A stretch of DNA of 64,000 bases, from the NCBI GenBank assembly GCA_053919585.1, contig CM132809.1; one strand, 5' to 3'. Positions 26,981 through 64,000 of the stretch are shown here, piece after piece. Source of the stretch: Euprymna scolopes (lineage: Eukaryota). The position numbers and the translations under genes were made by a program. How positions within the stretch are numbered: the stretch's first letter is position 1; each line of letters starts with the position of its first letter. The notes under the pieces are model-generated. The model had not been told where the DNA came from and searched no databases. It saw only the letters and a list, made by a program, of their open reading frames with translations.

Positions 26981-27900
26981 TTTTTTTACACAAGCATCAC
27001 CACATTATCAAGGCTAAGAGGCCACTCAAGGATTAGGGTTAAAGAGTGTACAGTAGAAATTAGACAATATAGTAATCATTAGTAATGAAAATTCGGTAAA
27101 TTTGATAACTTATATGGAACGGCTCATCAAGAACTTATTTACGTTAGACTTGAACACAACCATATTGTACTCAGCCGGAAAGCAGGAAAACGGAAGACAA
27201 TTCCACAGGCGTGCACTTCTAAGAAAGAAGCTTTGTTGATGGAATCTATGTTTAGGCACAGATAAAGAGTGAGGAGAATTATTGATGGTGTTTTCAGCTA
27301 GATGAGTGTTTCTTGTGAAAGTTTGGCGAGGGGGAATCGTAGACTGAAGCTCAGTCGAACACTTTCCATGAAAATAACGATATATCAGAGACAAACACGC
27401 AACATCTCTTCTGCGAGATAGAGGTTGAAGGGAAGAGAAAAGGACATCTCCTACGAGGCTACGAAGTCTATTTTGAACTCTATCAAGGCAGGATAAGTCC
27501 TTTCTAGCAGCTCCTGCCAAGATATGGCAACGGTATTCCATCCTTGGACGTACCTGGCTCTTATATAGATAGAGAATTGCATCAGCAGTTAGATATCTAC
27601 CAGATCGATAGAAAGATTCCACCATTTTTCCAGCGGCCTTGGCAACAGATTTGATGCACGTGTTCCATTTAAGATCAGGTGTAAAGGTCAAGCCCAGAAG
27701 CTTATAAAAACTTGAGGCCTCCTGAAGACGAGAGCCATTCATTTCAATTGATGCCAGATGTGGATTAGAATGTTGATGATGTAAAGAGAGAAGCTTGGTT
27801 TTAGATGCATTAAAAGTAACTAGCCACTCCTTTCCCCATTGTACTACGTGCTCAAGATCAGAGGAGAGAGAATCGGAGAGAACTTGGTCGTTTACAGTTT
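26981..27900 (-). mobile_element. 5'-truncated CR1/L2-type LINE (RT C-terminus plus 3' UTR)
   Basis: ORF 27110-27937 is highly similar to the 23928 copy and has the same 3' UTR and poly(A). Confidence 0.9.
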
Positions 27901-28289
27901 TAGATATTTTGCTAAAAAGTTGGATTAGTGATAGCAAACACTTTCTTTTGATAAAAGTTCGGGAGTTTTACGAGTTCTTAATTCTTTTCTTTGTTGCCAC
28001 AAATGATGGAGATACACAGACTGAGATAGATTTTATCAAGCCTTAATATCTGAAATCGTCTTATTTCTGTCCTTTATCTTGGGTGCTGCCATTTATTTTC
28101 ATTTATTCATATTATTCTATATAGGTATGATTAATAGCTGACCTTATAGTGAGCAGTATCCTCACTGCAGGTACCATCACCCTGTATATAAAGAAAGTAT
28201 GAAGGCATCCGAAGACGAGTTCCGCGATGTGGAGAAAGATTTTATTTATGAGAACTTTAATATTAACATGGTTCACATAATTATGGTTT

Positions 28290-30920
28290 TCACTTTGTAT
28301 GGTATTTCATATGTTTTGTTAGATCTTTTTTATGAAAACATGAATATACACATTTTTCACAAGAATATGGCCTTCCACTACTGTGAAATATCATATGCAT
28401 CTCTAGATGGTGTTTCTGCGAACATGAATATTCACATTGTTCACAAGAAAATGGCTTTTGTCCAGTGTGAGTCCTAATATGTAGCACTAGATGTGCTTTC
28501 TGCCGACATGAATAATCACATTGTTTACAAGAATATGGCTTTTCACCAGTGTTAGTACTCATATACGCTGCTAGATTTTGTTGCTCAGGACGTGGATATT
28601 GATATTGTTCACGAGAATATGGATTTTCTCCGGTGTCAGTACTCGTATGCATCGCGAGATTTGGTTTCTCAGGAGAGGAATATTCCAATTGTTCCAAAGA
28701 ATATGGTTTTCCTCCAGTGTGAGTACTCATATGTATCGCTAGATTTGGTTTCTCAAGACAGGAATACTCCAATTGTTCCAAGGAATATGACTTTTCCTCA
28801 GTGTGAGTACTCATATGCATCAGTAGATTTTGATCAGCAGAACGTGGATATTGACATTGTTCCTGAGAATATGGATTTTCTCCTGTGTGAGTACTCATAT
28901 GCATCGGTAGATTTGATTTCTCAGGACAGGAATACTCCAATTGTTCCAAGGAATATGATTTTTCCGCAGTGTTAGTACTCATATGCATCGGTCGATTTGA
29001 TTTCTCAGGACAGGAATACTCCAATTGTTCCAAGGAATATGATTTTTCCGCAGTGTTAGTACTCATATGCATCGGTAGATTTGATTTCTCAGGACAGGAA
29101 TACTCCAATTGTTCCAAGGAATATGATTTTTCCGCAGTGTTAGTACTCATATGCATCGGTAGATTTGATTTCTCAGGACAGGAATACTCCAATTGTTCCA
29201 AGGAATATGATTTTTCCGCAGTGGTACTACTCGAATGCATCGGTAGATTTGATTTCTCAGGACAGAAATACTCCAATTGTTCCAAGGAATGCTCCAATTC
29301 TTCCAAGGAATATGACTTTTCCGCAGTGTTAGTACTCATATGCATCGGTAGATTTGATTTCTCAGGACAGGAATACTCCAATTGTTCCAAGGAATATGAC
29401 TTTTCCGCAGTGTTACTACTCATATGCATCGGATGATTCGATTTCTCAGGACAGGAATACTCCAATTGTTCCAAGGAATATGACTTTTCCTCAGTGTTAC
29501 TACTCATATGCATCGGTAGATTTGATTTCTCAGGACAGGAATACTCCAATTGTTCCAAGGAATATGACTTTTCCTCAGTGTTACTACTCATATGCATCGG
29601 TAGATTTGATTTCTCAGGACAGAAATACTCCAATAGTTCCAAGGAATGCTCCAATTCTTCCAAGGAATATGACTTTTCCGCAGTGTTAGTACTCATATGC
29701 ATCGGTAGATTTGATTTCTCAGGACAGGAATACTCTAATTGTCCCAAGGAATATGACTTTTCCTCAGTGTTACTACTCATATGCATCGGTAGATTTGATT
29801 TCTCAGGACAGGAATACTCCAATTGTTCCAAGGAATATGACTTTTCCTCAGTGTTACTACTCATATGCATCGGTAGATTTGATTTCTCAGGACAGGAATA
29901 CTCCAATTGTTCCAAGGAATATGACTTTTCCTCAGTGTTACTACTCATAGGCATCGGTAGATTTGATTTCTCAGGAAAGAAATACTCCAATTGTTCCAAG
30001 GAATATGACTTTTCCGCAGTGTTAGTACTCATATGCATCGGTAGATTTGATTTCTCAGGACAGGAATACTCCAATTGTTCCAAGGAATATGACTTTTCCT
30101 CAGTATTACTACTCATATGCATCGGTAGATTTGATTTCTCAGGACAGGAATACTCCAATTGTTCCAAGGAATATGACTTTTCCGCAGTGTTACTACTCAT
30201 ATGCATCGATAGATTTGATTTCTCAGGACAGAAATACTCCAATTGTTCCAAGGAATGCTCCAATTCTTCCAAGGAATATGACTTTTCCTCAGTGTTAGTA
30301 CTCATATGCATCGGTAGATTTGATTTCTCAGGACAGGAATACTCCAATTGTTCCAAGGAATATGACTTTTCCGCAGTGTTAGTACTCATATGCATCGGTA
30401 GATTTGATTTCTCAGGACAGGAATACTCCAATTGTTCCAAGGAATATGACTTTTCCTCAGTGTTACTACTCATATGCATCGGTAGATTTGATTTCTCAGG
30501 ACAGGAATACTCCAATTGTTCCAAGGAATATGACTTTTCCTCAGTGTTACTACTCATATGCATCGATAGATTTGATTTCTCAGGACAGGAATACTCCAAT
30601 TGTTCCAAGGAATGCTCCAATTCTTCCAAGGAATATGACTTTTCCGCAGTGTTAGTACTCATATGCATCGGTAGATTTGATTTCTCAGGACAGGAATACT
30701 CCAATTGTTCCAAGGAATATGACTTTTCCTCAGTGTTACTACTCATATGCATCGATAGATTTGATTTCTCAGGACAGGAATACTCCAATTGTTCCAAGGA
30801 ATATGACTTTTCCTCAGTGTTACTACTCATATGCATCGATAGATTTGATTTCTCAGGACAGGAATACTCCAATTGTTCCAAGGAATATGACTTTTCCTCA
30901 GTGTTACTACTCATATGCAT
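28290..30920 (-). CDS. C2H2 zinc-finger protein 3' ORF: degenerate 28-aa repeats followed by three intact fingers (true start unknown; may be a pseudogene)
   Basis: The C-terminus has CKQCDYSCRQKAHLVLHIRTH, CEQCEYSCSQKHHLEMHMIFH and CEKCVYSCFHKKDLTKHMKYH with TGEKPY/TGQKPF/SGRPY linkers at 28293-28529. The frame is open to the first upstream stop at 30936. Confidence 0.55.
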   Translation of the reverse strand: MHMSSNTEEKSYSLEQLEYSCPEKSNLSMHMSSNTEEKSYSLEQLEYSCPEKSNLSMHMSSNTEEKSYSLEQLEYSCPEKSNLPMHMSTNTAEKSYSLEELEHSLEQLEYSCPEKSNLSMHMSSNTEEKSYSLEQLEYSCPEKSNLPMHMSSNTEEKSYSLEQLEYSCPEKSNLPMHMSTNTAEKSYSLEQLEYSCPEKSNLPMHMSTNTEEKSYSLEELEHSLEQLEYFCPEKSNLSMHMSSNTAEKSYSLEQLEYSCPEKSNLPMHMSSNTEEKSYSLEQLEYSCPEKSNLPMHMSTNTAEKSYSLEQLEYFFPEKSNLPMPMSSNTEEKSYSLEQLEYSCPEKSNLPMHMSSNTEEKSYSLEQLEYSCPEKSNLPMHMSSNTEEKSYSLGQLEYSCPEKSNLPMHMSTNTAEKSYSLEELEHSLELLEYFCPEKSNLPMHMSSNTEEKSYSLEQLEYSCPEKSNLPMHMSSNTEEKSYSLEQLEYSCPEKSNHPMHMSSNTAEKSYSLEQLEYSCPEKSNLPMHMSTNTAEKSYSLEELEHSLEQLEYFCPEKSNLPMHSSSTTAEKSYSLEQLEYSCPEKSNLPMHMSTNTAEKSYSLEQLEYSCPEKSNLPMHMSTNTAEKSYSLEQLEYSCPEKSNRPMHMSTNTAEKSYSLEQLEYSCPEKSNLPMHMSTHTGENPYSQEQCQYPRSADQNLLMHMSTHTEEKSYSLEQLEYSCLEKPNLAIHMSTHTGGKPYSLEQLEYSSPEKPNLAMHTSTDTGENPYSREQYQYPRPEQQNLAAYMSTNTGEKPYSCKQCDYSCRQKAHLVLHIRTHTGQKPFSCEQCEYSCSQKHHLEMHMIFHSSGRPYSCEKCVYSCFHKKDLTKHMKYHTK

Positions 30921-33900
30921 CGATAGATTTGATTTCTAAGGACAGGAATACTTCAATTGTTCCAAGGAATATGACTTTTCCTCAGTGTTACTACTCATAT
31001 GCATCGATAGATTTGATTTCTCAGGACAGGAATACTCCAATTGTTCCAAGGAATATGACTTTTCCTCAGTGTTACTACTCATATGCATCGATAGATTTGA
31101 TTTCTCAGGACAGAAATACTCCAATTCTTCCAAGGAATATGACTTTTCCTCAGTGTTACTACTCATATGCATCGATAGATTTGATTTCTCAGGACAGGAA
31201 TACTCCAATTGTTCCAAGGAATGCTCCAATTCTTCCAAGGAATATGACTTTTCCGCAGTGTTAGTACTCATATGCATCGGTAGATTTGATTTCTCAGGAC
31301 AGAAATACTCCAATTGTTCCAAGGAATATTACTTTTCCTCAGTGTTACTACTCATATGCATCGATAGATTTGATTTCTCAGGACAGGAATACTCCAATTG
31401 TTCCAAGGAATGCTCCAATTCTTCCAAGGAATATGACTTTTCCGCAGTGTTAGTACTCATATGCATCGATAGATTTGATTTCTCAGGACAGAAATACTCC
31501 AATTGTTCCAAGGAATATGACTTTTCCTCAGTGTTACTACTCATATGCATCGATAGATTTGATTTCTCAGGACAGGAATACTCCAATTGTTCCAAGGAAT
31601 GCTCCAATTCTTCCAAGGAATATGACTTTTCCGCAGTGTTAGTACTCATATGCATCGGTAGATTTGATTTCTCAGGACAGAAATACTCCAATTGTTCCAA
31701 GGAATATGACTTTTCCTCAGTGTTACTACTCATATGCATCGATAGATTTGATTTCTCAGGACAGGAATACTCCAATTGTTCCAAGGAATGCTCAAATTCT
31801 TCCAAGGAATATGACTTTTCCGCAGTGTTAGTACTCATATGCATCGATAGATTTGATTTCTCAGGACAGAAATACTCCAATTGTTCCAAGGAATATGACT
31901 TTTCCTCAGTGTTACTACTCATATGCATCGATAGATTTGATTTCTCAGGACAGGAATACTCCAATTGTTCCAAGGAATGCTCCAATTCTTCCAAGGAATA
32001 TGACTTTTCCGCAGTGTTAGTACTCATATGCATCGGTAGATTTGATTTCTCAGGACAGGAATACTCCAATTGTTCCAAGGAATATGACTTTTCCTCAGTG
32101 TTACTACTCATATGCATCGGTAGATTTGATTTCTCAGGACAGGAATACTCCAATTGTTCCAAGGAATATGACTTTTCCTCAGTGTTACTACTCATATGCA
32201 TCGATAGATTTGATTTCTCAGGACAGTAATACTCCAATTGTTCCAAGGAATGCTCCAATTCTTCCAAGGAATATGACTTTTCCGCAGTGTTAGTACTCAT
32301 ATGCATCGGTAGATTTGATTTCTCAGGACAGGAATACTCCAATTGTTCCAAGGAATATGACTTTTCCTCAGTGTTACTACTCATATGCATCGATAGATTT
32401 GATTTCTCAGGACAGGAATACTCCAATTGTTCCAAGGAATATGACTTTTCCTCAGTGTTACTACTCATATGCATCGATAGATTTGATTTCTCAGGACAGG
32501 AATACTCCAATTGTTCCAAGGAATATGACTTTTCCTCAGTGTTACTACTCATATGCATCGATAGATTTGATTTCTAAGGACAGGAATACTCCAATTGTTC
32601 CAAGGAATATGACTTTTCCTCAGTGTTACTACTCATATGCATCGATAGATTTGATTTCTCAGGACAGGAATACTCCAATTGTTCCAAGGAATATGACTTT
32701 TCCTCAGTGTTACTACTCATATGCATCGATAGATTTGATTTCTCAGGACAGAAATACTCCAATTGTTCCAAGGAATATGACTTTTCCTCAGTGTTACTAC
32801 TCATATGCATCGATAGATTTGATTTCTCAGGACAGGAATACTCCAATTGTTCCAAGGAATGCTCCAATTCTTCCAAGGAATATGACTTTTCCGCAGTGTT
32901 AGTACTCATATGCATCGGCAGATTTGATTTCTCAGGACAGAAATACTCCAATTGTTCCAAGGAATATGACTTTTCCTCAGTGTTACTACTCATATGCATC
33001 GATAGATTTGATTTCTCAGGACAGGAATACTCCAATTGTTCCAAGGAATGCTCCAATTCTTCCAAGGAATATGACTTTTCCGCAGTGTTAGTACTCATAT
33101 GCATCGATAGATTTGATTTCTCAGGACAGAAATACTCCGATTGTTCCAAGGAATATGACTTTTCCTCAGTGTTACTACTCATATGCATCGATAGATTTGA
33201 TTTCTCAGGACAGGAATACTCCAATTGTTCCAAGGAATGCTCCAATTCTTCCAAGGAATATGACTTTTCCGCAGTGTTAGTACTCATATGCATCGGTAGA
33301 TTTGATTTCTCAGGACAGAAATACTCCAATTGTTCCAAGGAATATGACTTTTCCTCAGTGTTACTACTCATATGCATCGATAGATTTGATTTCTCAGGAC
33401 AGGAATACTCCAATTGTTCCAAGGAATGCTCCAATTCTTCCAAGGAATATGACTTTTCCGCAGTGTTAGTACTCATATGCATCGATAGATTTGATTTCTC
33501 AGGACAGAAATACTCCAATTGTTCCAAGGAATATGACTTTTCCTCAGTGTTACTACTCATATGCATCGATAGATTTGATTTCTCAGGACAGGAATACTCC
33601 AATTGTTCCAAGGAATGCTCCAATTCTTCCAAGGAATATGACTTTTCCGCAGTGTTAGTACTCATATGCATCGGTAGATTTGATTTCTCAGGACAGGAAT
33701 ACTCCAATTGTTCCAAGGAATATGACTTTTCCTCAGTGTTACTACTCATATGCATCGATAGATTTGATTTCTCAGGACAGGAATACTCTAATTGTCCCAA
33801 GGAATATGACTTTTCCGCAGTGTTACTACTCATATGCATCGGTAGATTTGATTTCTCAGGACAGGAATACTCCAATTGTTCCAAGGAATATGACTTTTCC

Positions 33901-36900
33901 TCAGTGTTACTACTCATATGCATCGGTAGATTTGATTTCTCAGGAAAGAAATACTCCAATTGTTCCAAGGAATATGACTTTTCCTCAGTGTTACTACTCA
34001 TATGCATCGGTAGATTTTATTTCTCAGGACAGGAATACTCCAATTGTTCCAAGGAATATGACTTTTCCTCAGTGTTACTACTCATATGCATCGATAGATT
34101 TGATTTCTCAGGACAGGAATACTCCAATTGTTCCAAGGAATATGACTTTTCCTCAGTGTTACTACTCATATGCATCGATAGATTTGATTTCTCAGGACAG
34201 GAATACTCTAATTGTCCCAAGGAATATGACTTTTCCGCAGTGTTACTACTCATATGCATCGGTAGATTTGATTTCTCAGGATAGAAATACTCCAATTGTT
34301 CCAAGGAATATGACTTTTCCTCAGTGTTACTACTCATATGCATCGGTAGATTTGATTTCTCAGGAAAGAAATACTCCAATTGTTCCAAGGAATATGACTT
34401 TTCCTCAGTGTTACTACTCATATGCATCGGTAGATTTTATTTCTCAGGACAGGAATACTCCAATTGTTCCAAGGAATATGACTTTTCCTCAGTGTTACTA
34501 CTCATATGCATCGATAGATTTGATTTCTCAGGACAGGAATACTCCAATTGTTCCAAGGAATATGACTTTTCCTCAGTGTTACTACTCATATGCATCGATA
34601 GATTTGATTTCTCAGGACAGGAATACTCCAATTGTTCCAAGGAATATGACTTTTCCTCAGTGTTACTACTCATATGCATCGATAGATTTGATTTCTCAGG
34701 ACAGAAATACTCCAATTGTTCCAAGGAATGCTCCAATTCTTCCAAGGAATATGACTTTTCCTCAGTGTTAGTACTCATATGCATCGGTAGATTTGATTTC
34801 TCAGGACAGGAATACTCCAATTGTTCCAAGGAATATGACTTTTCCGCAGTGTTAGTACTCATATGCATCGGTAGATTTGATTTCTCAGGACAGGAATACT
34901 CCAATTGTTCCAAGGAATATGACTTTTCCTCAGTGTTACTACTCATATGCATCGATAGATTTGATTTCTCAGGACAGGAATACTCCAATTGTTCCAAGGA
35001 ATGCTCCAATTCTTCCAAGGAATATGACTTTTCCGCAGTGTTAGTACTCATATGCATCGGTAGATTTGATTTCTCAGGACAGGAATACTCCAATTGTTCC
35101 AAGGAATATGACTTTTCCTCAGTGTTACTACTCATATGCATCGGTAGATTTGATTTCTCAGGACAGAAATACTCCAATTGTTCCAAGGAATATGACTTTT
35201 CCTCAGTGTTACTACTCATATGCATCGATAGATTTGATTTCTCAGGACAGGAATACTCCAATTGTTCCAAGGAATGCTCCAATTCTTCCAAGGAATATGA
35301 CTTTTCCGCAGTGTTAGTACTCATATGCATCGGTAGATTTGATTTCTCAGGACAGAAATACTCCAATTGTTCCAAGGAATGCTCCAATTCTTCCAAGGAA
35401 TATGACTTTTCCGCAGTGTTAGTACTCATATGCATCGGTAGATTTGATTTCTCAGGACAGAAATACTCCAATTGTTCCAAGGAATATGACTTTTCCTCAG
35501 TGTTACTACTCATATGCATCGATAGATTTGATTTCTCAGGACAGGAATACTCCAATTGTTCCAAGGAATATGACTTTTCCTCAGTGTTACTACTCATATG
35601 CATCGATAGATTTGATTTCTCAGGACAGGAATACTCCAATTGTTCCAAGGAATATGACTTTTCCTCAGTGTTAGTACTCATATGCATCGATAGATTTTAT
35701 TTCTCAGGACAGGAATACTCCAATTGTTCCAAGGAATATGACTTTTCCTCAGTGTTACTACTCATATGCATCGATAGATTTGATTTCTCAGGACAGGAAT
35801 ACTCCAATTGTTCCAAGGAATGCTCCAATTCTTCCAAGGAATATGACTTTTCCTCAGTGTTAGTACTCATATGCATCGGTAGATTTGATTTCTCAGGACA
35901 GGAATACTCCAATTGTTCCAAGGAATATGACTTTTCCGCAGTGTTAGTACTCATATGCATCGGTAGATTTGATTTCTCAGGACAGGAATACTCCAATTGT
36001 TCCAAGGAATATGACTTTTCCTCAGTGTTACTACTCATATGCATCGGTAGATTTGATTTCTCAGAACAGGAATACTCAAATTGTTCCAAGGAATATGACT
36101 TTTCCTCAGTGTTACTACTCATATGCATCGATAGATTTGATTTCTCAGGACAGGAATACTCCAATTGTTCCAAGGAATGCTCCAATTCTTCCAAGGAATA
36201 TGACTTTTCCGCAGTGTTAGTACTCATATGCATCGGTAGATTTGATTTCTCAGGACAGGAATACTCCAATTGTTCCAAGGAATATGACTTTTCCTCAGTG
36301 TTACTACTCATATGCATCGATAGATTTGATTTCTCAGGACAGGAATACTCCAATTGTTCCAAGGAATATGACTTTTCCTCAGTGTTACTACTCATATGCA
36401 TCGATAGATTTGATTTCTCAGGACAGGAATACTCCAATTGTTCCAAGGAATATGACTTTTCCTCAGTGTTAGTACTCATATGCATCGATAGATTTGATTT
36501 CTCAGGACAGGAATACTCCAATTGTTCCAAGGAATATGACTTTTCCTCAGTGTTACTACTCATATGCATCGATAGATTTGATTTCTCAGGACAGGAATAC
36601 TCCAATTGTTCCAAGGAATATGACTTTTCCTCAGTGTTACTACTCATATGCATCGATAGATTTGATTTCTCAGGACAGGAATACTCCAATTGTTCCAAGG
36701 AATGCTCCAATTCTTCCAAGGAATATGACTTTTCCTCAGTGTTAGTACTCATATGCATCGGTAGATTTGATTTCTCAGGACAGGAATACTCCAATTGTTC
36801 CAAGGAATATGACTTTTCCTCAGTGTTACTACTCATATGCATCGGTAGATTTGATTTCTCAGGACAGGAATACTCCAATTGTTCCAAGGAATATGACTTT

Positions 36901-39900
36901 TCCTCAGTGTTACTACTCATAGGCATCGGTAGATTTGATTTCTCAGGACAGGAATACTCCAATTGTTCCAAGGAATATGACTTTTCCTCAGTGTTACTAC
37001 TCATAGGCATCGGTAGATTTGATTTCTCAGGACAGGAATACTCCAATTGTTCCAAGGAATATGACTTTTCCGCAGTGTTACTACTCATATGCATCGATAG
37101 ATTTGATTTCTCAGGACAGGAATACTCCAATTGTTCCAAGGAATGCTCCAATTCTTCCAAGGAATATGACTTTTCCTCAGTGTTAGTACTCATATGCATC
37201 GGTAGATTTGATTTCTCAGGACAGGAATACTCCAATTGTTCCAAGGAATATGACTTTTCCTCAGTATTACTACTCATATGCATCGATAGATTTGATTTCT
37301 CAGGACAGGAATACTCCAATTGTTCCAAGGAATGCTCCAATTCTTCCAAGGAATATGACTTTTCCGCAGTGTTACTACTCATATGCATCGATAGATTTGA
37401 TTTCTCAGGACAGAAATACTCCAATTGTTCCAAGGAATGCTCCAATTCTTCCAAGGAATATTACTTTTCCTCAGTGTTAGTACTCATATGCATCGGTAGA
37501 TTTGATTTCTCAGGACAGGAATACTCCAATTGTTCCAAGGAATATGACTTTTCCGCAGTGTTAGTACTCATATGCATCGGTAGATTTGATTTCTCAGGAC
37601 AGGAATACTCCAATTGTTCCAAGGAATATGACTTTTCCTCAGTGTTACTACTCATATGCATCGGTAGATTTCATTTCTCTGGACAGGAATACTCCAATTG
37701 TTCCAAGGAATATGACTTTTCCTCAGTGTTACTACTCATATGCATCGATAGATTTGATTTCTCAGGACAGGAATACTCCAATTGTTCCAAGGAATGCTCC
37801 AATTCTTCCAAGGAATATGACTTTTCCGCAGTGTTAGTACTCATATGCATCGGTAGATTTGATTTCTCAGGACAGGAATACTCCAATTGTTCCAAGGAAT
37901 ATGACTTTTCCTCAGTGTTACTACTCATATGCATCGATAGATTTGATTTCTCAGGACAGGAATACTCCAATTGTTCCAAGGAATGCTCCAATTCTTCCAA
38001 GGAATATGACTTTTCCTCAGTGTTAGTACTCATATGCATCGGTAGATTTGATTTCTCAGGACAGGAATACTCCAATTGTTCCAAGGAATATGACTTTTCC
38101 TTAGTATTACTACTCATATGCATCGATAGATTTGATTTCTCAGGACAGAAATACTCCAATTGTTCCAAGGAATATGACTTTTCCTCAGTGTTACTACTCA
38201 TATGCATCGATAGATTTGATTTCTCAGGACAGGAATACTCCAATTGTTCCAAGGAATATGACTTTTCCTCAGTGTTACTACTCATATGCATCGATAGATT
38301 TGATTTCTCAGGAAAGGAATACTCCAATTCTTCCAAGGAATATGACTTTTCCGCAGTGTTACTACTCATATGCATCGATAGAGTTGATTTCTCAGGACAG
38401 AAATACTCCAATTGTTCCAAGGAATGCTCCAATTCTTCCAAGGAATATGACTTTTCCTCAGTGTTAGTACTCATATGCATCGGTAGATTTGATTTCTCAG
38501 GACAGGAATACTCCAATTGTTCCAAGGAATATGACTTTTCCGCAGTGTTAGTACTCATATGCATCGGTAGATTTGATTTCTCAGGACAGGAATACTCCAA
38601 TTGTTCCAAGGAATATGACTTTTCCTCAGTGTTACTACTCATATGCATCGGTAGATTTGATTTCTCAGGACAGGAATACTCCAATTGTTCCAAGGAATAT
38701 GACTTTTCCTCAGTGTTACTACTCATATGCATCGATAGATTTTATTTCTCAGGACAGGAATACTCCAATTGTTCCAAGGAATGCTCCAATTCTTCCAAGG
38801 AATATGACTTTTCCTCAGTGTTAGTACTCATATGCATCGGTAGATTTGATTTCTCAGGACAGGAATACTCCAATTGTTCCAAGGAATATGACTTTTCCTT
38901 AGTATTACTACTCATATGCATCGATAGATTTGATTTCTCAGGACAGGAATACTCCAATTCTTCCAAGGAATATGACTTTTCCGCAGTGTTATTACTCATA
39001 TGCATCGATAGATTTGATTTCTCAGGACAGAAATACTCCAATTGTTCCAAGGAATGCTCCAATTCTTCCAATGAATATGACTTTTCCTCAGTGTAAGTAC
39101 TCATATGCATCGGTAGATTTGATTTCTCAGGACAGGAATACTCCAATTGTTCCAAGGAATATGACTTTTCCGCAGTGTTAGTACTCATATGCATCGGTAG
39201 ATTTGATTTCTCAGGACAGGAATACTCCAATTGTTCCAAGGAATATGACTTTTCCGCAGTGTTAGTACTCATATGCATCGATAGATTTGATTTCTCAGGA
39301 CAGAAATACTCCAATTGTTCCAAGGAATATGACTTTTCCTCAGTATTACTACTCATATGCATCGGTAGATTTGATTTCTCAGGACAGGAATACTCCAATT
39401 GTTCCAAGGAATATGACTTTTCCTCGGTGTTACTACTCATATGCATCGATAGATTTGATTTCTCAGGACAGGAATACTCCAATTCTTCCAAGGAATATGA
39501 CTTTTCCGCAGTGTTACTACTCATATGCATCGATTGATTTGATTTCTCAGGACAGAAATACTCCAATTGTTCCAAGGAATGCTCCAATTCTTCCAAGGAA
39601 TATGACTTTTCCTCAGTGTTAGTACTCATATGCATCGGTAGATTTGATTTCTCAGGACAGGAATACTCCAATTGTTCCAAGGAATATGACTTTTCCGCAG
39701 TGTTAGTACTCATATGCATCGGTAGATTTGATTTCTCAGGACAGGAATACTCCAATTGTTCCAAGGAATATGACTTTTCCTCAGTGTTACTACTCATATG
39801 CATCGGTAGATTTGATTTCTCAGGACAGGAATACTCCAATTGTTCCAAGGAATATGACTTTTCCTCAGTGTTACTACTCATATGCATCGATAGATTTGAT

Positions 39901-42900
39901 TTCTCAGGACAAGAATACTCCAATTGTTCCAAGGAATGCTCCAATTCTTCCAAGGAATATGACTTTTCCTCAGTGTTAGTACTCATATGCATCGGTAGAT
40001 TTGATTTCTCAGGACAGAAATACTCCAATTGTTCCAAGGAATATGACTTTTCCTTAGTATTACTACTCGTATGCATCGATAGATTTGATTTCTCAGGACA
40101 GGAATACTCCAATTCTTCCAAGGAATATGACTTTTCCGCAGTGTTACTACTCATATGCATCGATAGATTTGATTTCTCAGGACAGAAATACTCCAATTGT
40201 TCCAAGGAATGCTCCAATTCTTCCAAGGAATATGACTTTTCCTCAGTGTTAGTACTCATATGCATCGGTAGATTTGATTTCTCAGGACAGGAATACTCCA
40301 ATTGTTCCAAGGAATAAGACTTTTCCGCAGTGTTAGTACTCATATGCATCGGTAGATTTGATTTCTCAGGACAGGAATACTCCAATTGTTCCAAGGAATA
40401 TGACTTTTCCTCAGTGTTACTACTCATATGCATCGGTAGATTTGATTTCTCAGGACAGGAATACTCCAATTGTTCCAAGGAATATGACTTTTCCTCAGTG
40501 TTACTACTCATATGCATCGATAGATTTGATTTCTCAGGACAGGAATACTCCAATTGTTCCAAGGAATGCTCCAATTCTTCCAAGGAATATGACTTTTCCT
40601 CAGTGTTAGTACTCATATGCATCGGTAGATTTGATTTCTCAGGACAGGAATACTCCAATTGTTCCAAGGAATATGACTTTTCCGCAGTGTTAGTACTCAT
40701 ATGCATCGGTAGATTTGATTTCTCAGGACAGGAATACTCCAATTGTTCCAAGGAATATGACTTTTCCTCAGTGTTACTACTCATATGCATCGGTAGATTT
40801 GATTTCTCAGAACAGGAATACTCAAATTGTTCCAAGGAATATGACTTTTCCTCAGTGTTACTACTCATATGCATCGATAGATTTGATTTCTCAGGACAGG
40901 AATACTCCAATTGTTCCAAGGAATGCTCCAATTCTTCCAAGGAATATGACTTTTCCGCAGTGTTAGTACTCATATGCATCGGTAGATTTGATTTCTCAGG
41001 ACAGGAATACTCCAATTGTTCCAAGGAATATGACTTTTCCTCAGTGTTACTACTCATATGCATCGATAGATTTGATTTCTCAGGACAGGAATACTCCAAT
41101 TGTTCCAAGGAATATGACTTTTCCTCAGTGTTACTACTCATATGCATCGATAGATTTGATTTCTCAGGACAGGAATACTCCAATTGTTCCAAGGAATATG
41201 ACTTTTCCTCAGTGTTAGTACTCATATGCATCGATAGATTTGATTTCTCAGGACAGGAATACTCCAATTGTTCCAAGGAATATGACTTTTCCTCAGTGTT
41301 ACTACTCATATGCATCGATAGATTTGATTTCTCAGGACAGGAATACTCCAATTGTTCCAAGGAATATGACTTTTCCTCAGTGTTACTACTCATATGCATC
41401 GATAGATTTGATTTCTCAGGACAGGAATACTCCAATTGTTCCAAGGAATGCTCCAATTCTTCCAAGGAATATGACTTTTCCTCAGTGTTAGTACTCATAT
41501 GCATCGGTAGATTTGATTTCTCAGGACAGGAATACTCCAATTGTTCCAAGGAATATGACTTTTCCTCAGTGTTACTACTCATATGCATCGGTAGATTTGA
41601 TTTCTCAGGACAGGAATACTCCAATTGTTCCAAGGAATATGACTTTTCCTCAGTGTTACTACTCATAGGCATCGGTAGATTTGATTTCTCAGGACAGGAA
41701 TACTCCAATTGTTCCAAGGAATATGACTTTTCCTCAGTGTTACTACTCATAGGCATCGGTAGATTTGATTTCTCAGGACAGGAATACTCCAATTGTTCCA
41801 AGGAATATGACTTTTCCGCAGTGTTACTACTCATATGCATCGATAGATTTGATTTCTCAGGACAGGAATACTCCAATTGTTCCAAGGAATGCTCCAATTC
41901 TTCCAAGGAATATGACTTTTCCTCAGTGTTAGTACTCATATGCATCGGTAGATTTGATTTCTCAGGACAGGAATACTCCAATTGTTCCAAGGAATATGAC
42001 TTTTCCTCAGTATTACTACTCATATGCATCGATAGATTTGATTTCTCAGGACAGGAATACTCCAATTGTTCCAAGGAATGCTCCAATTCTTCCAAGGAAT
42101 ATGACTTTTCCGCAGTGTTACTACTCATATGCATCGATAGATTTGATTTCTCAGGACAGAAATACTCCAATTGTTCCAAGGAATGCTCCAATTCTTCCAA
42201 GGAATATTACTTTTCCTCAGTGTTAGTACTCATATGCATCGGTAGATTTGATTTCTCAGGACAGGAATACTCCAATTGTTCCAAGGAATATGACTTTTCC
42301 GCAGTGTTAGTACTCATATGCATCGGTAGATTTGATTTCTCAGGACAGGAATACTCCAATTGTTCCAAGGAATATGACTTTTCCTCAGTGTTACTACTCA
42401 TATGCATCGGTAGATTTCATTTCTCTGGACAGGAATACTCCAATTGTTCCAAGGAATATGACTTTTCCTCAGTGTTACTACTCATATGCATCGATAGATT
42501 TGATTTCTCAGGACAGGAATACTCCAATTGTTCCAAGGAATGCTCCAATTCTTCCAAGGAATATGACTTTTCCGCAGTGTTAGTACTCATATGCATCGGT
42601 AGATTTGATTTCTCAGGACAGGAATACTCCAATTGTTCCAAGGAATATGACTTTTCCTCAGTGTTACTACTCATATGCATCGATAGATTTGATTTCTCAG
42701 GACAGGAATACTCCAATTGTTCCAAGGAATGCTCCAATTCTTCCAAGGAATATGACTTTTCCTCAGTGTTAGTACTCATATGCATCGGTAGATTTGATTT
42801 CTCAGGACAGGAATACTCCAATTGTTCCAAGGAATATGACTTTTCCTTAGTATTACTACTCATATGCATCGATAGATTTGATTTCTCAGGACAGAAATAC

Positions 42901-45900
42901 TCCAATTGTTCCAAGGAATATGACTTTTCCTCAGTGTTACTACTCATATGCATCGATAGATTTGATTTCTCAGGACAGGAATACTCCAATTGTTCCAAGG
43001 AATATGACTTTTCCTCAGTGTTACTACTCATATGCATCGATAGATTTGATTTCTCAGGAAAGGAATACTCCAATTCTTCCAAGGAATATGACTTTTCCGC
43101 AGTGTTACTACTCATATGCATCGATAGAGTTGATTTCTCAGGACAGAAATACTCCAATTGTTCCAAGGAATGCTCCAATTCTTCCAAGGAATATGACTTT
43201 TCCTCAGTGTTAGTACTCATATGCATCGGTAGATTTGATTTCTCAGGACAGGAATACTCCAATTGTTCCAAGGAATATGACTTTTCCGCAGTGTTAGTAC
43301 TCATATGCATCGGTAGATTTGATTTCTCAGGACAGGAATACTCCAATTGTTCCAAGGAATATGACTTTTCCTCAGTGTTACTACTCATATGCATCGGTAG
43401 ATTTGATTTCTCAGGACAGGAATACTCCAATTGTTCCAAGGAATATGACTTTTCCTCAGTGTTACTACTCATATGCATCGATAGATTTTATTTCTCAGGA
43501 CAGGAATACTCCAATTGTTCCAAGGAATGCTCCAATTCTTCCAAGGAATATGACTTTTCCTCAGTGTTAGTACTCATATGCATCGGTAGATTTGATTTCT
43601 CAGGACAGGAATACTCCAATTGTTCCAAGGAATATGACTTTTCCTTAGTATTACTACTCATATGCATCGATAGATTTGATTTCTCAGGACAGGAATACTC
43701 CAATTCTTCCAAGGAATATGACTTTTCCGCAGTGTTATTACTCATATGCATCGATAGATTTGATTTCTCAGGACAGAAATACTCCAATTGTTCCAAGGAA
43801 TGCTCCAATTCTTCCAATGAATATGACTTTTCCTCAGTGTAAGTACTCATATGCATCGGTAGATTTGATTTCTCAGGACAGGAATACTCCAATTGTTCCA
43901 AGGAATATGACTTTTCCGCAGTGTTAGTACTCATATGCATCGGTAGATTTGATTTCTCAGGACAGGAATACTCCAATTGTTCCAAGGAATATGACTTTTC
44001 CGCAGTGTTAGTACTCATATGCATCGATAGATTTGATTTCTCAGGACAGAAATACTCCAATTGTTCCAAGGAATATGACTTTTCCTCAGTATTACTACTC
44101 ATATGCATCGGTAGATTTGATTTCTCAGGACAGGAATACTCCAATTGTTCCAAGGAATATGACTTTTCCTCGGTGTTACTACTCATATGCATCGATAGAT
44201 TTGATTTCTCAGGACAGGAATACTCCAATTCTTCCAAGGAATATGACTTTTCCGCAGTGTTACTACTCATATGCATCGATTGATTTGATTTCTCAGGACA
44301 GAAATACTCCAATTGTTCCAAGGAATGCTCCAATTCTTCCAAGGAATATGACTTTTCCTCAGTGTTAGTACTCATATGCATCGGTAGATTTGATTTCTCA
44401 GGACAGGAATACTCCAATTGTTCCAAGGAATATGACTTTTCCGCAGTGTTAGTACTCATATGCATCGGTAGATTTGATTTCTCAGGACAGGAATACTCCA
44501 ATTGTTCCAAGGAATATGACTTTTCCTCAGTGTTACTACTCATATGCATCGGTAGATTTGATTTCTCAGGACAGGAATACTCCAATTGTTCCAAGGAATA
44601 TGACTTTTCCTCAGTGTTACTACTCATATGCATCGATAGATTTGATTTCTCAGGACAAGAATACTCCAATTGTTCCAAGGAATGCTCCAATTCTTCCAAG
44701 GAATATGACTTTTCCTCAGTGTTAGTACTCATATGCATCGGTAGATTTGATTTCTCAGGACAGAAATACTCCAATTGTTCCAAGGAATATGACTTTTCCT
44801 TAGTATTACTACTCGTATGCATCGATAGATTTGATTTCTCAGGACAGGAATACTCCAATTCTTCCAAGGAATATGACTTTTCCGCAGTGTTACTACTCAT
44901 ATGCATCGATAGATTTGATTTCTCAGGACAGAAATACTCCAATTGTTCCAAGGAATGCTCCAATTCTTCCAAGGAATATGACTTTTCCTCAGTGTTAGTA
45001 CTCATATGCATCGGTAGATTTGATTTCTCAGGACAGGAATACTCCAATTGTTCCAAGGAATAAGACTTTTCCGCAGTGTTAGTACTCATATGCATCGGTA
45101 GATTTGATTTCTCAGGACAGGAATACTCCAATTGTTCCAAGGAATATGACTTTTCCTCAGTGTTACTACTCATATGCATCGGTAGATTTGATTTCTCAGG
45201 ACAGGAATACTCCAATTGTTCCAAGGAATATGACTTTTCCTCAGTGTTACTACTCATATGCATCGATAGATTTGATTTCTCAGGACAGGAATACTCCAAT
45301 TGTTCCAAGGAATGCTCCAATTCTTCCAAGGAATATGACTTTTCCGCAGTGTTAGTACTCATATGCATCGGTAGATTTGATTTCTAAGGACAGAAATACT
45401 CCAATTGTTCCAAGGAATATGACTTTTCCTCAGTGTTACTACTCATAGGCATCGATAGATTTGATTTCTCAGGACAGGAATACTCCAATTGTTCCAAGGA
45501 ATATGACTTTTCCTCAGTGTTACTACTCATATGCATCGGTAGATTTGATTTCTCAGGACAGGAATACTCCAATTGTTCCAAGGAATATGACTTTTCCTCA
45601 GTGTTACTACTCATATGCATCGGTAGATTTGATTTCTCAGGACAGGAATACTCCAATTGTTCCAAGGAATATGACTTTTCCTCAGTGTTACTACTCATAT
45701 GCATCGGTAGATTTGATTTCTCAGGACAGGAATACTCCAATTGTTCCAAGGAATATGACTTTTCCTCAGTGTTAGTACTCATAGGCATCGGTAGATTTGA
45801 TTTCTCAGGACAGGTATACTCCAATTGTTCCAAGGAATATGACTTTTCCTCAGTGTTACTACTCATATGCATCGGTAGATTTGATTTCTCAGGACAGGAA

Positions 45901-48900
45901 TACTCCAATTGTTCCAAGGAATATGACTTTTCCTCAGTGTTACTACTCATATGCATCGGTAGATTTGATTTCTCAGGACAGGTATACTCCAATTGTTCCA
46001 AGGAATATGACTTTTCCTCAGTGTTACTACTCATATGCATCGGTAGATTTGATTTCTCAGGACAGGAATACTCCAATTGTTCCAAGGAATATGACTTTTC
46101 CTCAGTGTTACTACTCATATGCATCGGTAGATTTGATTTCTCAGGACAGGAATACTCCAATTGTTCCAAGGAATATGACTTTTCCTCAGTGTTACTACTC
46201 ATATGCATCGGTAGATTTGATTTCTCAGGACAGGTATACTCCAATTGCTCCAAGGAATATGACTTTTCCTCAGTGTTACTACTCATATGCATCGGTAGAT
46301 TTGATTCTCAGGACAGGTATACTCCAATTGTTCCAAGGAATATGACTTTTCCTCAGTGTTACTACTCATATGCATCGGTAGATTTGATTTCTCAGGACAG
46401 GAATACTCCAATTGTTCCAAGGAATATGATTTTTCCGCAATGTTAGTACTCATATGCATCGGTAGATTTGATTTCTCAGGACAGGAATACTCCAATTGTT
46501 CCAAGGAATATGATTTTTCCGCAGTGGTACTACTCGAATGCATCGGTAGATTTGATTTCTCAGGACAGAAATACTCCAATTGTTCCAAGGAATGCTCCAA
46601 TTCTTCCAAGGAATATGACTTTTCCGCAGTGTTAGTACTCATATGCATCGGTAGATTTGATTTCTCAGGACAGGAATACTCCAATTGTTCCAAGGAATAT
46701 GACTTTTCCGCAGTGTTACTACTCATATGCATCGGTAGATTCGATTTCTCAGGACAGGAATACTCCAATTGTTCCAAGGAATATGACTTTTCCTCAGTGT
46801 TACTACTCATATGCATCGGAAGATTTGATTTCTCAGGACAGGAATACTCCAATTGTTCCAAGGAATATGACTTTTCCTCAGTGTTACTACTCATATGCAT
46901 CGGTAGATTTGATTTCTCAGGACAGAAATACTCCAATAGTTCCAAGGAATGCTCCAATTCTTCCAAGGAATATGACTTTTCCGCAGTGTTAGTACTCATA
47001 TGCATCGGTAGATTTGATTTCTCAGGACAGGAATACTCTAATTGTCCCAAGGAATATGACTTTTCCTCAGTGTTACTACTCATATGCATCGGTAGATTTG
47101 ATTTCTCAGGACAGGAATACTCCAATTGTTCCAAGGAATATGACTTTTCCTCAGTGTTACTACTCATATGCATCGGTAGATTTGATTTCTCAGGACAGGA
47201 ATACTCCAATTGTTCCAAGGAATATGACTTTTCCTCAGTGTTACTACTCATAGGCATCGGTAGATTTGATTTCTCAGGACAGGAATACTCCAATGTTTCC
47301 AAGGAATGCTCCAATTCTTCCAAGGAATATGACTTTTCCTCAGTGTTAGTACTCATATGCATCGGTAGATTTGATTTCTCAGGACAGGAATACTCTAATT
47401 GTTCCAAGGAATATGACTTTTCCTCAGTGTTACTACTCATATGCATCGGTAGATTTGATTTCTCAGGACAGGAATACTCTAATTGTCCCAAGGAATATGA
47501 CTTTTCCTCAGTGTTACTACTCATATGCATCGGTAGATTTGATTTCCCAGGACAGGAATACTCCAATTGTTCCAAGGAATATGACTTTTCCTCAGTGTTA
47601 CTACTCATAGGCATCGGTAGATTTGATTTCTCAGGAAAGAAATACTCCAATTGTTCCAAGGAATATGACTTTTCCTCAGTGTTAGTACTCATATGCATCG
47701 GTAGATTTGATTTCTCAGGAAAGGAATACTCCAATTGTTCCAAGGAATATGACTTTTCCTCAGTATTACTACTCATATGCATCGGTAGATTTGATTTCTC
47801 AGGACAGGAATACTCCAATTGTTCCAAGGAATATTACTTTTCCGCAGTGTTACTACTCATATGCATCGATAGATTTGATTTCTCAGGACAGAAATACTCC
47901 AATTGTTCCAAGGAATGCTCCAATTCTTCCAAGGAATATGACTTTTCCTCAGTGTTAGTACTCATATGCATCGGTAGATTTGATTTCTCAGGACAGGAAT
48001 ACTCCTATTGTTCCAAGGAATATGACTTTTCCGCAGTGTTAGTACTCATATGCATCGGAAGATTTGATTTCTCAGGACAGGAATACTCCAATTGTTCCAA
48101 GGAATATGACTTTTCCTCAGTGTTACTACTCATATGCATCGGTAGATTTGATTTCTCAGGACAGGAATACTCCAATTGTTCCAAGGAATATGACTTTTCC
48201 TCAGTGTTACTACTCATATGCATCGATAGATTTGATTTCTCAGGACAGGAATACTCCAATTGTTCCAAGGAATGCTCCAATTCTTCCAAGGAATATGACT
48301 TTTCCGCAGTGTTTGTACTCATATGCATCGGTAGATTTGATTTCTCAGGACAGGAATACTCCAATTGTTCCAAGGAATATGACTTTTCCTCAGTGTTACT
48401 ACTCATATGCATCGATAGATTTGATTTCTCAGGACAGGAATACTCCAATTGTTCCAAGGAATATGACTTTTCCTCAGTGTTACTACTCATATGCATCGAT
48501 AGATTTGATTTCTCAGGACAGGAATACTCCAATTGTTCCAAGGAATATGACTTTTCCTCAGTGTTACTACTCTTATGCATCGATAGATTTGATTTCTAAG
48601 GACAGGAATACTCCAATTGTTCCAAGGAATATGACTTTTCCTCAGTGTTACTACTCATATGCATCGATAGATTTGATTTCTCAGGACAGGAATACTCCAA
48701 TTGTTCCAAGGAATATGACTTTTCCTCAGTGTTACTACTCATATGCATCGATAGATTTGATTTCTCAGGACAGAAATACTCCAATTGTTCCAAGGAATAT
48801 GACTTTTCCTCAGTGTTACTACTCATATGCATCGATAGATTTGATTTCTCAGGACAGGAATACTCCAATTGTTCCAAAGAATGCTTCAATTCTTCCAAGG

Positions 48901-63900: not shown

Positions 63901-64000
63901 TCCAATTGTTCCAAGGAATATGACTTTTCCGCAGTGTTAGTACTTATATGCATCGGTAGATTTGATTTCTCAGGACAGGAATACTCCAATTGTTCCAAGG
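28890..64000 (-). repeat. Giant tandem array (over 35 kb, roughly 390-400 units by estimate) of an 84-bp/105-bp unit derived from a C2H2 zinc-finger repeat; continues beyond the window
   Basis: Plus-strand unit CTCATATGCATCG(G/A)TAGATTTGATTTCTCAGGACAGGAATACTCCAATTGTTCCAAGGAATATGACTTTTCC(T/G)CAGTGTTA(C/G)TA. The minus frame reads YSLEQLEYSCPEKSNL(S/P)MHMS(S/T)NT(E/A)EKS. The 105-bp variant adds 21 bp (EELEHSL). Confidence 0.97.

What the first reader, a model, noticed from the sequence alone, without database searches (positions are those of the whole stretch)
28293..29000. Edge gradient from intact fingers to decayed fingers to homogenised monomer
Seen: moving upstream from the three intact fingers there are about four individually divergent transitional units (TGENPYSREQYQYPRPEQQNLAAY, TGGKPYSLEQLEYSSPEKPNLAMH, TEEKSYSLEQLEYSCLEKPNLAIH, TGENPYSQEQCQYPRSADQNLLMH) before the near-identical array begins. 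The LEQLEY change is already present in units that still have an HTG/HTE linker. Inference: cysteine loss preceded amplification, and edge units escaped homogenisation as unequal-crossover models predict. This records the ancestral state of the satellite.
Basis: partly seen in the sequence, partly recalled or inferred. Interest (0 to 1): 0.7.

Follow-up and report, generated by a model that had tools for sequence, protein, structure and literature searches.

The report
Old gene remnants beside finger-derived satellite
The four odd repeat units between three intact zinc fingers and an 84-kb satellite are leftovers of an older tract of cysteine-less finger units that un-amplified sister copies still carry, so the birth of this satellite from a dead zinc-finger gene can be traced step by step.

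Summary
The reading is correct at the letter level. On the minus strand, three intact C2H2 fingers (28299-28550) are preceded by four 84-bp cysteine-less units (U1-U4, 28551-28886). Upstream of those lies an array of 84/105-bp units.

There is no smooth gradient. Identity to the array consensus (out of 84) is F1 60, U1 59, U2 70, U3 78, U4 59, and 80 for the first array unit.
- U1 and U4 belong to a separate old "alpha" unit type.
- U2 and U3 are "beta" units.
- U3 is the sister of the satellite monomer and holds its ancestral state at 4 of their 6 differences.

The array has 966 units (83.9 kb), and its variants look neutral in the finger frame. Its far edge is abrupt.

The locus exists three times on this contig, with arrays of about 2.5, 3.4 and 83.9 kb. 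In copy B an exchange between an array unit and U2 has removed U3 and U4.

Three paralogs on another contig (83-84% nt) never amplified. They carry 10-14 divergent cysteine-less units, the same alpha-beta-beta-alpha end, the same three fingers and the same stop.

So cysteine loss did precede amplification. But U1-U4 are inherited units, not array monomers that escaped homogenisation.

Earlier scan notes (s1-279851, s1-279858) already described the array and its far edge.

The parts
28215..28298 (-). End of the reading frame (T-K-stop; stop at 28290-28292), followed by a relic finger with three further stops.
   Evidence: The same stop and the same relic are present in copies B and C and in paralogs L026-L028. 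They are therefore ancestral, not a recent lesion.
28299..28550 (-). Three intact C2H2 fingers: F3 (28299-28382), F2 (28383-28466) and F1 (28467-28550).
   Evidence: The motif C-x2-C-x12-H-x3-H is present in all three. Pfam places its best-scoring zinc-finger stretches at residues 799-839 of the 881-aa frame, which covers F1 and F2. This stretch is 100% identical in copies A, B and C.
28551..28634 (-). U1, an alpha-type cysteine-less unit (motif SREQYQYPR).
   Evidence: It matches its positional counterpart in paralog L028 at 78/84, but the array consensus only at 59/84. The U1 clade has 100/97 support.
28635..28718 (-). U2, a beta-type unit of a second subtype (motif SLEQLEYSS).
   Evidence: It matches the array consensus at 70/84. 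It sits in the beta2 clade (98/98) with the units labelled u2up in the paralogs. In copy B its 3' third survives in a chimeric unit.
28719..28802 (-). U3, a beta1-type unit and the closest surviving relative of the founder monomer of the satellite.
   Evidence: It matches the consensus at 78/84 and is sister to the satellite at 98/91. At 4 of the 6 differences U3 keeps the state shared with the paralogs.
28803..28886 (-). U4, an alpha-type unit (motif SQEQCQYPR) that keeps the second cysteine. It directly touches the array.
   Evidence: It matches its counterpart in L028 at 77/84, but the array consensus only at 59/84. It lies in the alpha clade.
28887..64000 (-). Satellite array of 84-bp units, with a 105-bp variant carrying an in-frame 21-bp duplication. 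It runs past the window end to genome position C27:112456781. In total it has 966 units over 83.9 kb.
   Evidence: Within the window there are 396 units. The whole array has 966 units, of which 838 are 84 bp and 121 are 105 bp. Units differ from the consensus at 1-2 of 84 positions on average. The variant spectrum is neutral, and stops and two frameshifts are present.

Best explanation
The region is the 3' end of a dead member of a lineage-specific C2H2 zinc-finger family.

**Family architecture.** In a single exon, members have two N-terminal fingers, a middle tract of 28-residue units that have lost their zinc-binding cysteines, three or four intact C-terminal fingers, and a stop.

**State before amplification.** The middle tract already held several unit types:
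- alpha: first Cys changed to R/Q/H, and YSC changed to YPR;
- beta: both Cys changed to W or L.

In this subfamily the start and the N-terminal fingers were already broken.

**Amplification.** This happened after the split from the contig-C46 paralogs (about 16% nt divergence) and before the threefold segmental duplication on C27 (1-4% divergence). A beta1-type unit nearly identical to U3, lying just upstream of U4, was multiplied, presumably by unequal exchange or replication slippage. It reached tens of copies. In copy A it later reached 966 copies.

**What U1-U4 are.** They are the inherited last four units of the old tract. Only U3, and more loosely U2, are kin of the monomer.

**Reach of homogenisation.**
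- It runs to the very last, ancestrally truncated unit at the far edge.
- It stops at U4 on this edge.
- In copy B an unequal exchange between an array unit and U2 has deleted U3 and U4.

**Shown versus inferred.** Shown: anatomy, paralogy, tree, neutral variant spectrum. Inferred: the order of events and the molecular process of amplification.
For: **Anatomy and register:**

**Array size and composition:**

**Neutral evolution of the array in the finger frame.**
- Distinct variants seen: 58 nonsynonymous, 17 synonymous and 9 stop.
- Possible single changes: 188, 45 and 19.
- 34 of 838 units of 84 bp carry a stop.

**Three copies of the locus on C27.**
- Arrays are about 83.9, 3.4 and 2.5 kb.
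- They share the same far edge and the same fingers.
- Flanks are 95.7-99.6% identical.

**Un-amplified paralogs L026-L028.**
- They are 77-78% aa and 83-84% nt identical over U4..F3.
- They have 10-14 divergent cysteine-less units, the same alpha-beta-beta-alpha end, and the same stop and relic finger.
- They share out-of-frame, stop-bearing N-terminal fingers with the window's far flank.

**Tree.**
- Fingers: 96/90.
- Alpha clade with U1 and U4: 86/78.
- Beta clade: 93/85.
- U3 plus satellite: 98/91, inside a beta1 clade at 99/96.

**Site-by-site comparison.** U3 holds the ancestral state at 4 of its 6 differences from the consensus.

**Copy B chimera.** Positions 1 to about 55-62 match the satellite. 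The remainder matches U2.

**Far edge.** The truncated terminal unit is 38/38 identical to the consensus, whereas its C46 counterpart is divergent.

**Wider family.** L029-L034 have the same architecture. L030 and L034 have a start codon and intact N-terminal fingers.
Against: - U3 groups with the satellite although U4 lies between them. This needs either a founder copied from U3 to the other side of U4, or conversion that jumped over U4. The data cannot tell which.
- U2 does not group with the C46 units at the same position but with units further upstream. Strict positional orthology of U2 is therefore uncertain.
- The tree rests on only 84 columns.
- In copies B and C the whole array is one open frame of 1360 and 1045 aa. 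A coding role there is not excluded.
- No read or RNA data could be obtained. Neither array length nor expression is independently checked.
Confidence: 0.8

Rival explanations
1. A finger lost its cysteines and was amplified. U1-U4 are early array monomers that diverged in place because unequal crossing-over rarely reaches the ends of an array.
For: - U2 and U3 become more array-like towards the array: 70 and 78 of 84.
- The first five array units differ from the consensus at 3-5 sites, against 1-2 in the interior.
- U3 is sister to the satellite.
Against: - U4, next to the array, is only 59/84 identical to the consensus. It groups with U1 and the paralog alpha units.
- The same four units, in the same order, exist in paralogs that never amplified.
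- The far edge has no transitional units.
- Copy B shows the edge being removed by an exchange.
Confidence: 0.15
2. The cysteine-less repeats plus the three fingers are still one expressed gene, at least in copies B and C. In that case the array is a coding repeat expansion rather than a satellite.
For: - Open frames of 1360 aa (B), 1045 aa (C) and 881 aa (A, the part next to the fingers) run through the array into the fingers.
- All but a handful of units are 84 or 105 bp long, both multiples of 3.
- Wider family members look like intact genes with a cysteine-less middle.
Against: - In A, stop, nonsynonymous and synonymous variants are seen in the proportions expected without selection. There are also 34 stop-bearing 84-bp units and two frameshifts.
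- The N-terminal fingers upstream of the array are broken in all copies of the subfamily.
- dN/dS of the cysteine-less units is about 0.6-1.4.
- No close protein exists in public protein sets: best identity is 42-43%, all generic zinc-finger proteins.
Confidence: 0.08
3. The pattern is an assembly artefact. On this view the three loci, or the 84-kb length, arise from mis-assembly of a repeat, and the edge units are mis-joined reads.
For: - Long satellites are hard to assemble.
- A 641-bp stretch is 100% identical in all three copies.
Against: - The flanks of the three copies differ by 0.4-4.3% and by indels.
- The arrays differ in unit order. Copy B has a specific chimeric unit.
- The edge units are reproduced in A and C, and their counterparts in three diverged paralogs.
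Confidence: 0.04

Closest known systems
PRDM9-type coding minisatellite (an 84-bp repeat, each unit encoding one C2H2 finger)
   Same: The unit length is 84 bp, which is one finger plus linker. Units are head to tail in one frame. Unit number changes by unequal exchange. Unit number varies between copies: about 10-14 cysteine-less units in the C46 paralogs, arrays of about 2.5 and 3.4 kb in copies C and B, and 966 units in copy A.
   Different: Here the repeated unit has lost both N-terminal cysteines and the last histidine. The array carries stops and frameshifts and evolves neutrally. At 84 kb it is in the size class of a satellite, not a minisatellite. The comparison with PRDM9 rests on my own knowledge. 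PRDM9 proteins appeared only as generic hits.
Satellite arrays with homogeneous cores and divergent edge monomers (for example alpha satellite higher-order cores flanked by monomeric layers), as predicted by unequal-crossover models
   Same: The interior is highly homogeneous, with 1-2 differences per 84 bp. The first few units at one edge are slightly more divergent. One near-ancestral unit, U3, survives at the edge.
   Different: The divergent flank units are mostly not of the monomer's own lineage: U1 and U4 are a different unit type. The other edge is sharp. Paralogs show that the flank units predate the array. The comparison rests on general knowledge of satellite evolution. No paper describing a finger-derived satellite was found.
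Degenerate (non-zinc-binding) fingers inside tandem C2H2 zinc-finger genes
   Same: The units have finger length and a TGEKP-like linker but lack zinc ligands. They lie between intact fingers in family members that look intact (L030, L034).
   Different: Here there are long runs of 3 to about 20 such units, homogenised within each gene and evolving at dN/dS of about 1. In one dead copy a unit has expanded to a satellite.

Membership tests
Satellite DNA | Long head-to-tail array of near-identical monomers | tested here: met
   There are 966 units over 83.9 kb, differing from the consensus at 1-2 of 84 positions on average.
Satellite DNA | No coding constraint on the monomer | tested here: met
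   Distinct variants are 58 nonsynonymous, 17 synonymous and 9 stop, against 188, 45 and 19 possible. Two units break the frame.
Satellite DNA | Present at many loci or chromosomes, or at a centromere or telomere | tested here: not met
   All 150 listed matches lie in three arrays on one contig (C27) within 2.1 Mb. A further 87 matches were not listed. The chromosomal role is unknown.
C2H2 zinc finger (Pfam zf-C2H2 and relatives) | C-x2-C-x12-H-x3-H zinc ligands | tested here: met
   This is met for F1-F3 only. It is not met for U1-U4 or for the array monomer, which has L at both Cys positions and N at the last His.
C2H2 zinc finger (Pfam zf-C2H2 and relatives) | 28-residue period with a TGEKP-like linker | tested here: met
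   U1-U4 and the array keep the 84-bp period and T-G/E-E-K/N-P/S-Y-S.
Coding zinc-finger minisatellite (PRDM9-like) | Every repeat unit encodes a functional finger in one uninterrupted frame | tested here: not met
   The units lack zinc ligands. Array A has 34 stop-bearing 84-bp units and 2 frameshifts. Arrays B and C are open throughout, but they consist of the same ligand-less units.
Edge gradient produced by unequal crossing-over | Divergence from the array consensus rises steadily towards the edge | tested here: not met
   Going outward, the differences from the consensus per 84 bp are 4, 25, 6, 14 and 25 for the first array unit, U4, U3, U2 and U1.
Edge gradient produced by unequal crossing-over | Both ends of the array show divergent units | tested here: not met
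   At the far edge the last 16 units have 0-3 differences. The truncated terminal unit is 38/38 identical to the consensus.
Edge gradient produced by unequal crossing-over | Edge units descend from the same founder monomer as the array | tested here: inconclusive
   U3 does (98/91). U2 is a related subtype. U1 and U4 do not, since they form a separate alpha clade also present in un-amplified paralogs.

The most novel reading that the evidence does not exclude
The cysteine-less units may not be mere decay. They may be a maintained, in-frame but sequence-free spacer in a living, lineage-specific zinc-finger family: two N-terminal fingers, 3 to about 20 "ghost" fingers, then three or four C-terminal fingers. 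On this reading the internal 84-bp repeat behaves as a hypervariable coding minisatellite and repeatedly seeds satellites once a copy dies. The series 10-14 units, then 30-40, then 966 units would be the first traceable gene-to-satellite transition of this kind.
Probability: 0.2. Interest if true: 0.65.

Novelty: new variant of a known kind. Interest (0 to 1): 0.45.

Why it matters
How satellites are born is usually unrecoverable, because homogenisation erases the founder. Here the founder's close kin survives (U3). So do the pre-existing mixed tract (U1-U4 and the paralogs on C46), intermediate array sizes (copies B and C) and a caught-in-the-act erosion of the edge (copy B), all in one genome. 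Together these give a dated, stepwise example of a gene-internal repeat turning into an 84-kb satellite. The locus also shows that "transitional" edge units need not be products of edge-protected divergence. This is a caution for reading array edges as fossil records.

Tried and rejected
1. **One giant gene.** I checked whether the array is a single reading frame. It is not: the longest open stretch in the window is 1154 aa, and stops and two frameshifts are present.
2. **Selection in the array.** I tested for it from the spectrum of distinct variants. There is no depletion of stops or nonsynonymous changes.
3. **dN/dS between paralogs and among units.** Values are about 0.55-1.4 with small counts. 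This gives no evidence of constraint on the cysteine-less units, and none on F1 and F2 either.
4. **Public proteins with such repeats.** Two word searches were swamped by generic zinc-finger proteins at 43% identity or less. The third search and the large representative search were not spent, because the claim does not rest on absence of relatives.
5. **Sequencing runs.** I asked for runs to check expression and assembly.
6. **Literature.** Three searches found no description of a finger-derived satellite. The octopus genome paper, which I recalled as mentioning 70-90 bp tandem repeats near C2H2 genes, is not held. That recollection is therefore untested, and the organism of this window is not established.
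7. **Simple dimer duplication.** I considered one as the cause of the alpha-beta-beta-alpha order. The order does not fit a tandem dimer, and the paralogs show that the arrangement is inherited.
Full report
**What is there**

All coding sense is on the minus strand. Translation and an 84-bp register give the following, from low to high coordinate:
- a relic finger with stops (28215-28298, which includes the stop at 28290-28292);
- three intact C2H2 fingers: F3 28299-28382, F2 28383-28466, F1 28467-28550;
- four cysteine-less units: U1 28551-28634, U2 28635-28718, U3 28719-28802, U4 28803-28886;
- from 28887, an array of 84-bp units.

Pfam places its best-scoring zinc-finger stretches in F1 and F2, and all three fingers carry the full C2H2 ligand pattern. 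A profile of four array monomers finds U1-U4 at E = 3e-9 to 6e-25, so the units are homologous, not chance.

**The array**

Inside the window there are 396 units (309 of 84 bp, 85 of 105 bp, one of 83 bp and one of 85 bp). Of these, 28 carry a stop in the finger frame. The 105-bp form has an in-frame 21-bp duplication.

The window is G000:C27:112344001-112408000. The array continues beyond the window to 112456781, giving 966 units and 83.9 kb in all.

Relative to the consensus there are 84 distinct single-base variants: 58 nonsynonymous, 17 synonymous and 9 stop. The possible changes number 188, 45 and 19. That shows no depletion of damaging changes. The array is therefore a non-coding satellite in the finger frame, even though the consensus itself is open.

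Units differ from the consensus at 1-2 of 84 sites throughout. The first five units at this edge differ at 3-5 sites, and the last 16 at the far edge at 0-3.

**No smooth gradient**

| Unit | Identity to consensus (of 84) |
|---|---|
| F3 | 50 |
| F2 | 58 |
| F1 | 60 |
| U1 | 59 |
| U2 | 70 |
| U3 | 78 |
| U4 | 59 |
| First array unit | 80 |

U1 and U4 are each other's nearest relatives inside the window (68/84). They share the motif YPR and a Q-rich second half; I call this type alpha. U2, U3 and the array share SLEQLEY; I call this type beta. The physical order is alpha-beta-beta-alpha followed by the array.

**The far edge**

The array ends abruptly in a truncated unit fused to T-H-S-G-Q-T-K-S. 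Upstream of it lie about three broken fingers with stops and a frameshift, then AT-rich DNA. The 38-bp tail of the truncated unit is identical to the satellite consensus. Nothing transitional exists on that side. This agrees with the earlier scan notes s1-279858 and s1-279851.

**Three copies on the same contig**

The whole locus occurs three times on C27 in the same orientation:
- A, the window copy;
- B, at 113.728-113.732 Mb, with an array of about 3.4 kb;
- C, at 114.476-114.479 Mb, with an array of about 2.5 kb.

All three have the same far edge and the same fingers. Their flanks are 95.7-99.6% identical with indels, so these are real segmental duplicates. All three arrays contain the 21-bp duplication. 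Amplification to tens of units, including that variant, therefore predates the duplication.

C has U1-U4 as in A. B lacks U3 and U4 and instead has one chimeric unit. Its positions 1 to about 55-62 match the satellite consensus and its remainder matches U2. This is the footprint of an unequal exchange between an array unit and U2. The edge is thus not shielded from the exchange process.

**Un-amplified paralogs**

A six-frame search with U4..F3 finds three loci on contig C46 (L026, L027, L028) at 77-78% amino-acid and 83-84% nucleotide identity over the full length. Their architecture is the same as in the window:
- broken N-terminal fingers;
- the same truncated unit;
- 10-14 individually divergent cysteine-less units of alpha and beta type;
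- the same alpha-beta-beta-alpha end;
- F1-F3, the same stop and the same relic finger.

Lesions in the N-terminal part are shared with the window: a finger out of frame with the tract, and a stop after K-D-W-C. The common ancestor of this subfamily was therefore already dead at its 5' end.

U1 and U4 match their positional counterparts at 76-78 and 74-77 of 84.

In the C46 copies the U3 and U2 positions have W at both former cysteine positions (TGG), where the window has L (TTG). TGT to TGG to TTG is a one-step-at-a-time path through states that are actually observed. A route through TTT (F), seen in the wider family, is not excluded.

**Tree**

A maximum-likelihood tree of 45 units on 84 columns gives:
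- fingers on one side at 96/90;
- an alpha clade at 86/78, holding U1 (its own clade at 100/97) and U4 with their counterparts;
- a beta clade at 93/85.

Inside beta, U3 is sister to the satellite (98/91), within a beta1 clade (99/96) that also holds the C46 U3 units. U2 falls in a beta2 clade (98/98) with units that lie further upstream in the paralogs.

With the root on the fingers, the successive outgroups of the satellite are U3, then U2's clade, then alpha.

Site by site, U3 differs from the consensus at six positions. At four of them U3 has the state shared with the paralogs, and two are private. U3 is therefore close to the founder monomer.

The satellite consensus has four derived changes, including the loss of the last histidine (H to N). 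The first array unit still has that histidine.

**Wider family**

Loci at 57-61% identity (L029-L034) show the same plan: cysteine-less middle units (3 to about 20, for example with S-R-E-Q-F-Q-Y-S-R-S) between intact fingers. L030 and L034 have a start codon, two intact N-terminal fingers and three or four intact C-terminal fingers in open frames of 279-299 aa. The alpha type resembles this family-wide cysteine-less unit, so it is old.

Among the cysteine-less units within a locus, dN/dS is 0.8-1.4. Between the window and the C46 copies it is 0.55-0.7 for U4..U1, with 10-11 synonymous and 26-29 nonsynonymous changes. That is close to the neutral 1:4 expectation. There is thus no sign of constraint on their sequence. 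Whether their reading frame is maintained in living members remains open.

**Most likely history (inferred)**

1. A family member with a mixed cysteine-less tract lost its 5' end.
2. It was copied between C46 and C27.
3. On C27 a beta1 unit almost identical to U3 and lying upstream of U4 was multiplied by unequal exchange or slippage to tens of copies.
4. The locus was duplicated three times.
5. Copy A then grew to 966 units, while copy B lost U3 and U4 in an exchange.

Why U3 is so close to the array across the intervening U4 is unresolved. Either the founder was copied from U3, or conversion jumped over U4.

**What could not be done**

- Two protein word searches returned only generic zinc-finger proteins at 43% identity or less.
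- No paper describing a zinc-finger-derived satellite was found.
- The organism is not established.
- The N run at 13242-13391 was left untouched.

**Verdict**

The inference that cysteine loss came first is right, and is now supported by independent copies. The idea that U3 preserves the ancestral monomer is right.

The "gradient by escape from homogenisation" reading is wrong for U1 and U4 and is not mirrored at the other edge. As a phenomenon this is an ordinary kind of event: a satellite born from a pre-existing tandem repeat. Its origin, however, is unusually well preserved and datable.

Noticed in passing
window 23424-23760 (minus strand): A second, short member of the same family lies 4.6 kb downstream. 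It has a remnant of the N-terminal finger, one cysteine-less unit and three fingers, two of which have a damaged first histidine, followed by stops. It is also present in copies B and C.
   Followed up: partly
window 23930-24807 and 26980-27870: An 890-bp segment is repeated at about 88% identity within the low flank. The repeat is present in all three copies. It overlaps open frames of 188 and 285 aa that have no convincing Pfam match.
   Followed up: partly
window 28299-28382 (F3): The last finger is 82/84 nt identical to the C46 paralog L026. The surrounding 641 bp is only 83-84% identical, and F1 and F2 are 69-73/84. This suggests conversion or constraint on this one finger.
   Followed up: no
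window 28000-28640: This 641-bp stretch (fingers, U1 and 3' flank) is 100% identical in copies A, B and C, although their flanks differ by 0.4-4.3%.
   Followed up: no
L028 (C46:183457195-183460755): This paralog has a small run of about four near-identical beta units, read in another frame because of a frameshift. This looks like an independent mini-amplification of the same tract.
   Followed up: no
C27:112522807, 113781853, 114561157 (plus strand): A further family member at about 79% identity lies 54-150 kb from each of copies A, B and C, in opposite orientation. The duplicated segment is therefore probably large.
   Followed up: no
window 11650-12948 and 21774-22292: Two unrelated tandem arrays: a 40-bp unit with 32 copies at 95% matches, and a 46-bp unit with 11 copies at 97% matches.
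   Followed up: no
window 19202-19996 (minus strand): An open frame with a weak integrase-core match (rve, E = 7e-7, below Pfam's cut-off). It lies next to a (GGTTAG)x4.7 patch at 19639-19666.
   Followed up: no
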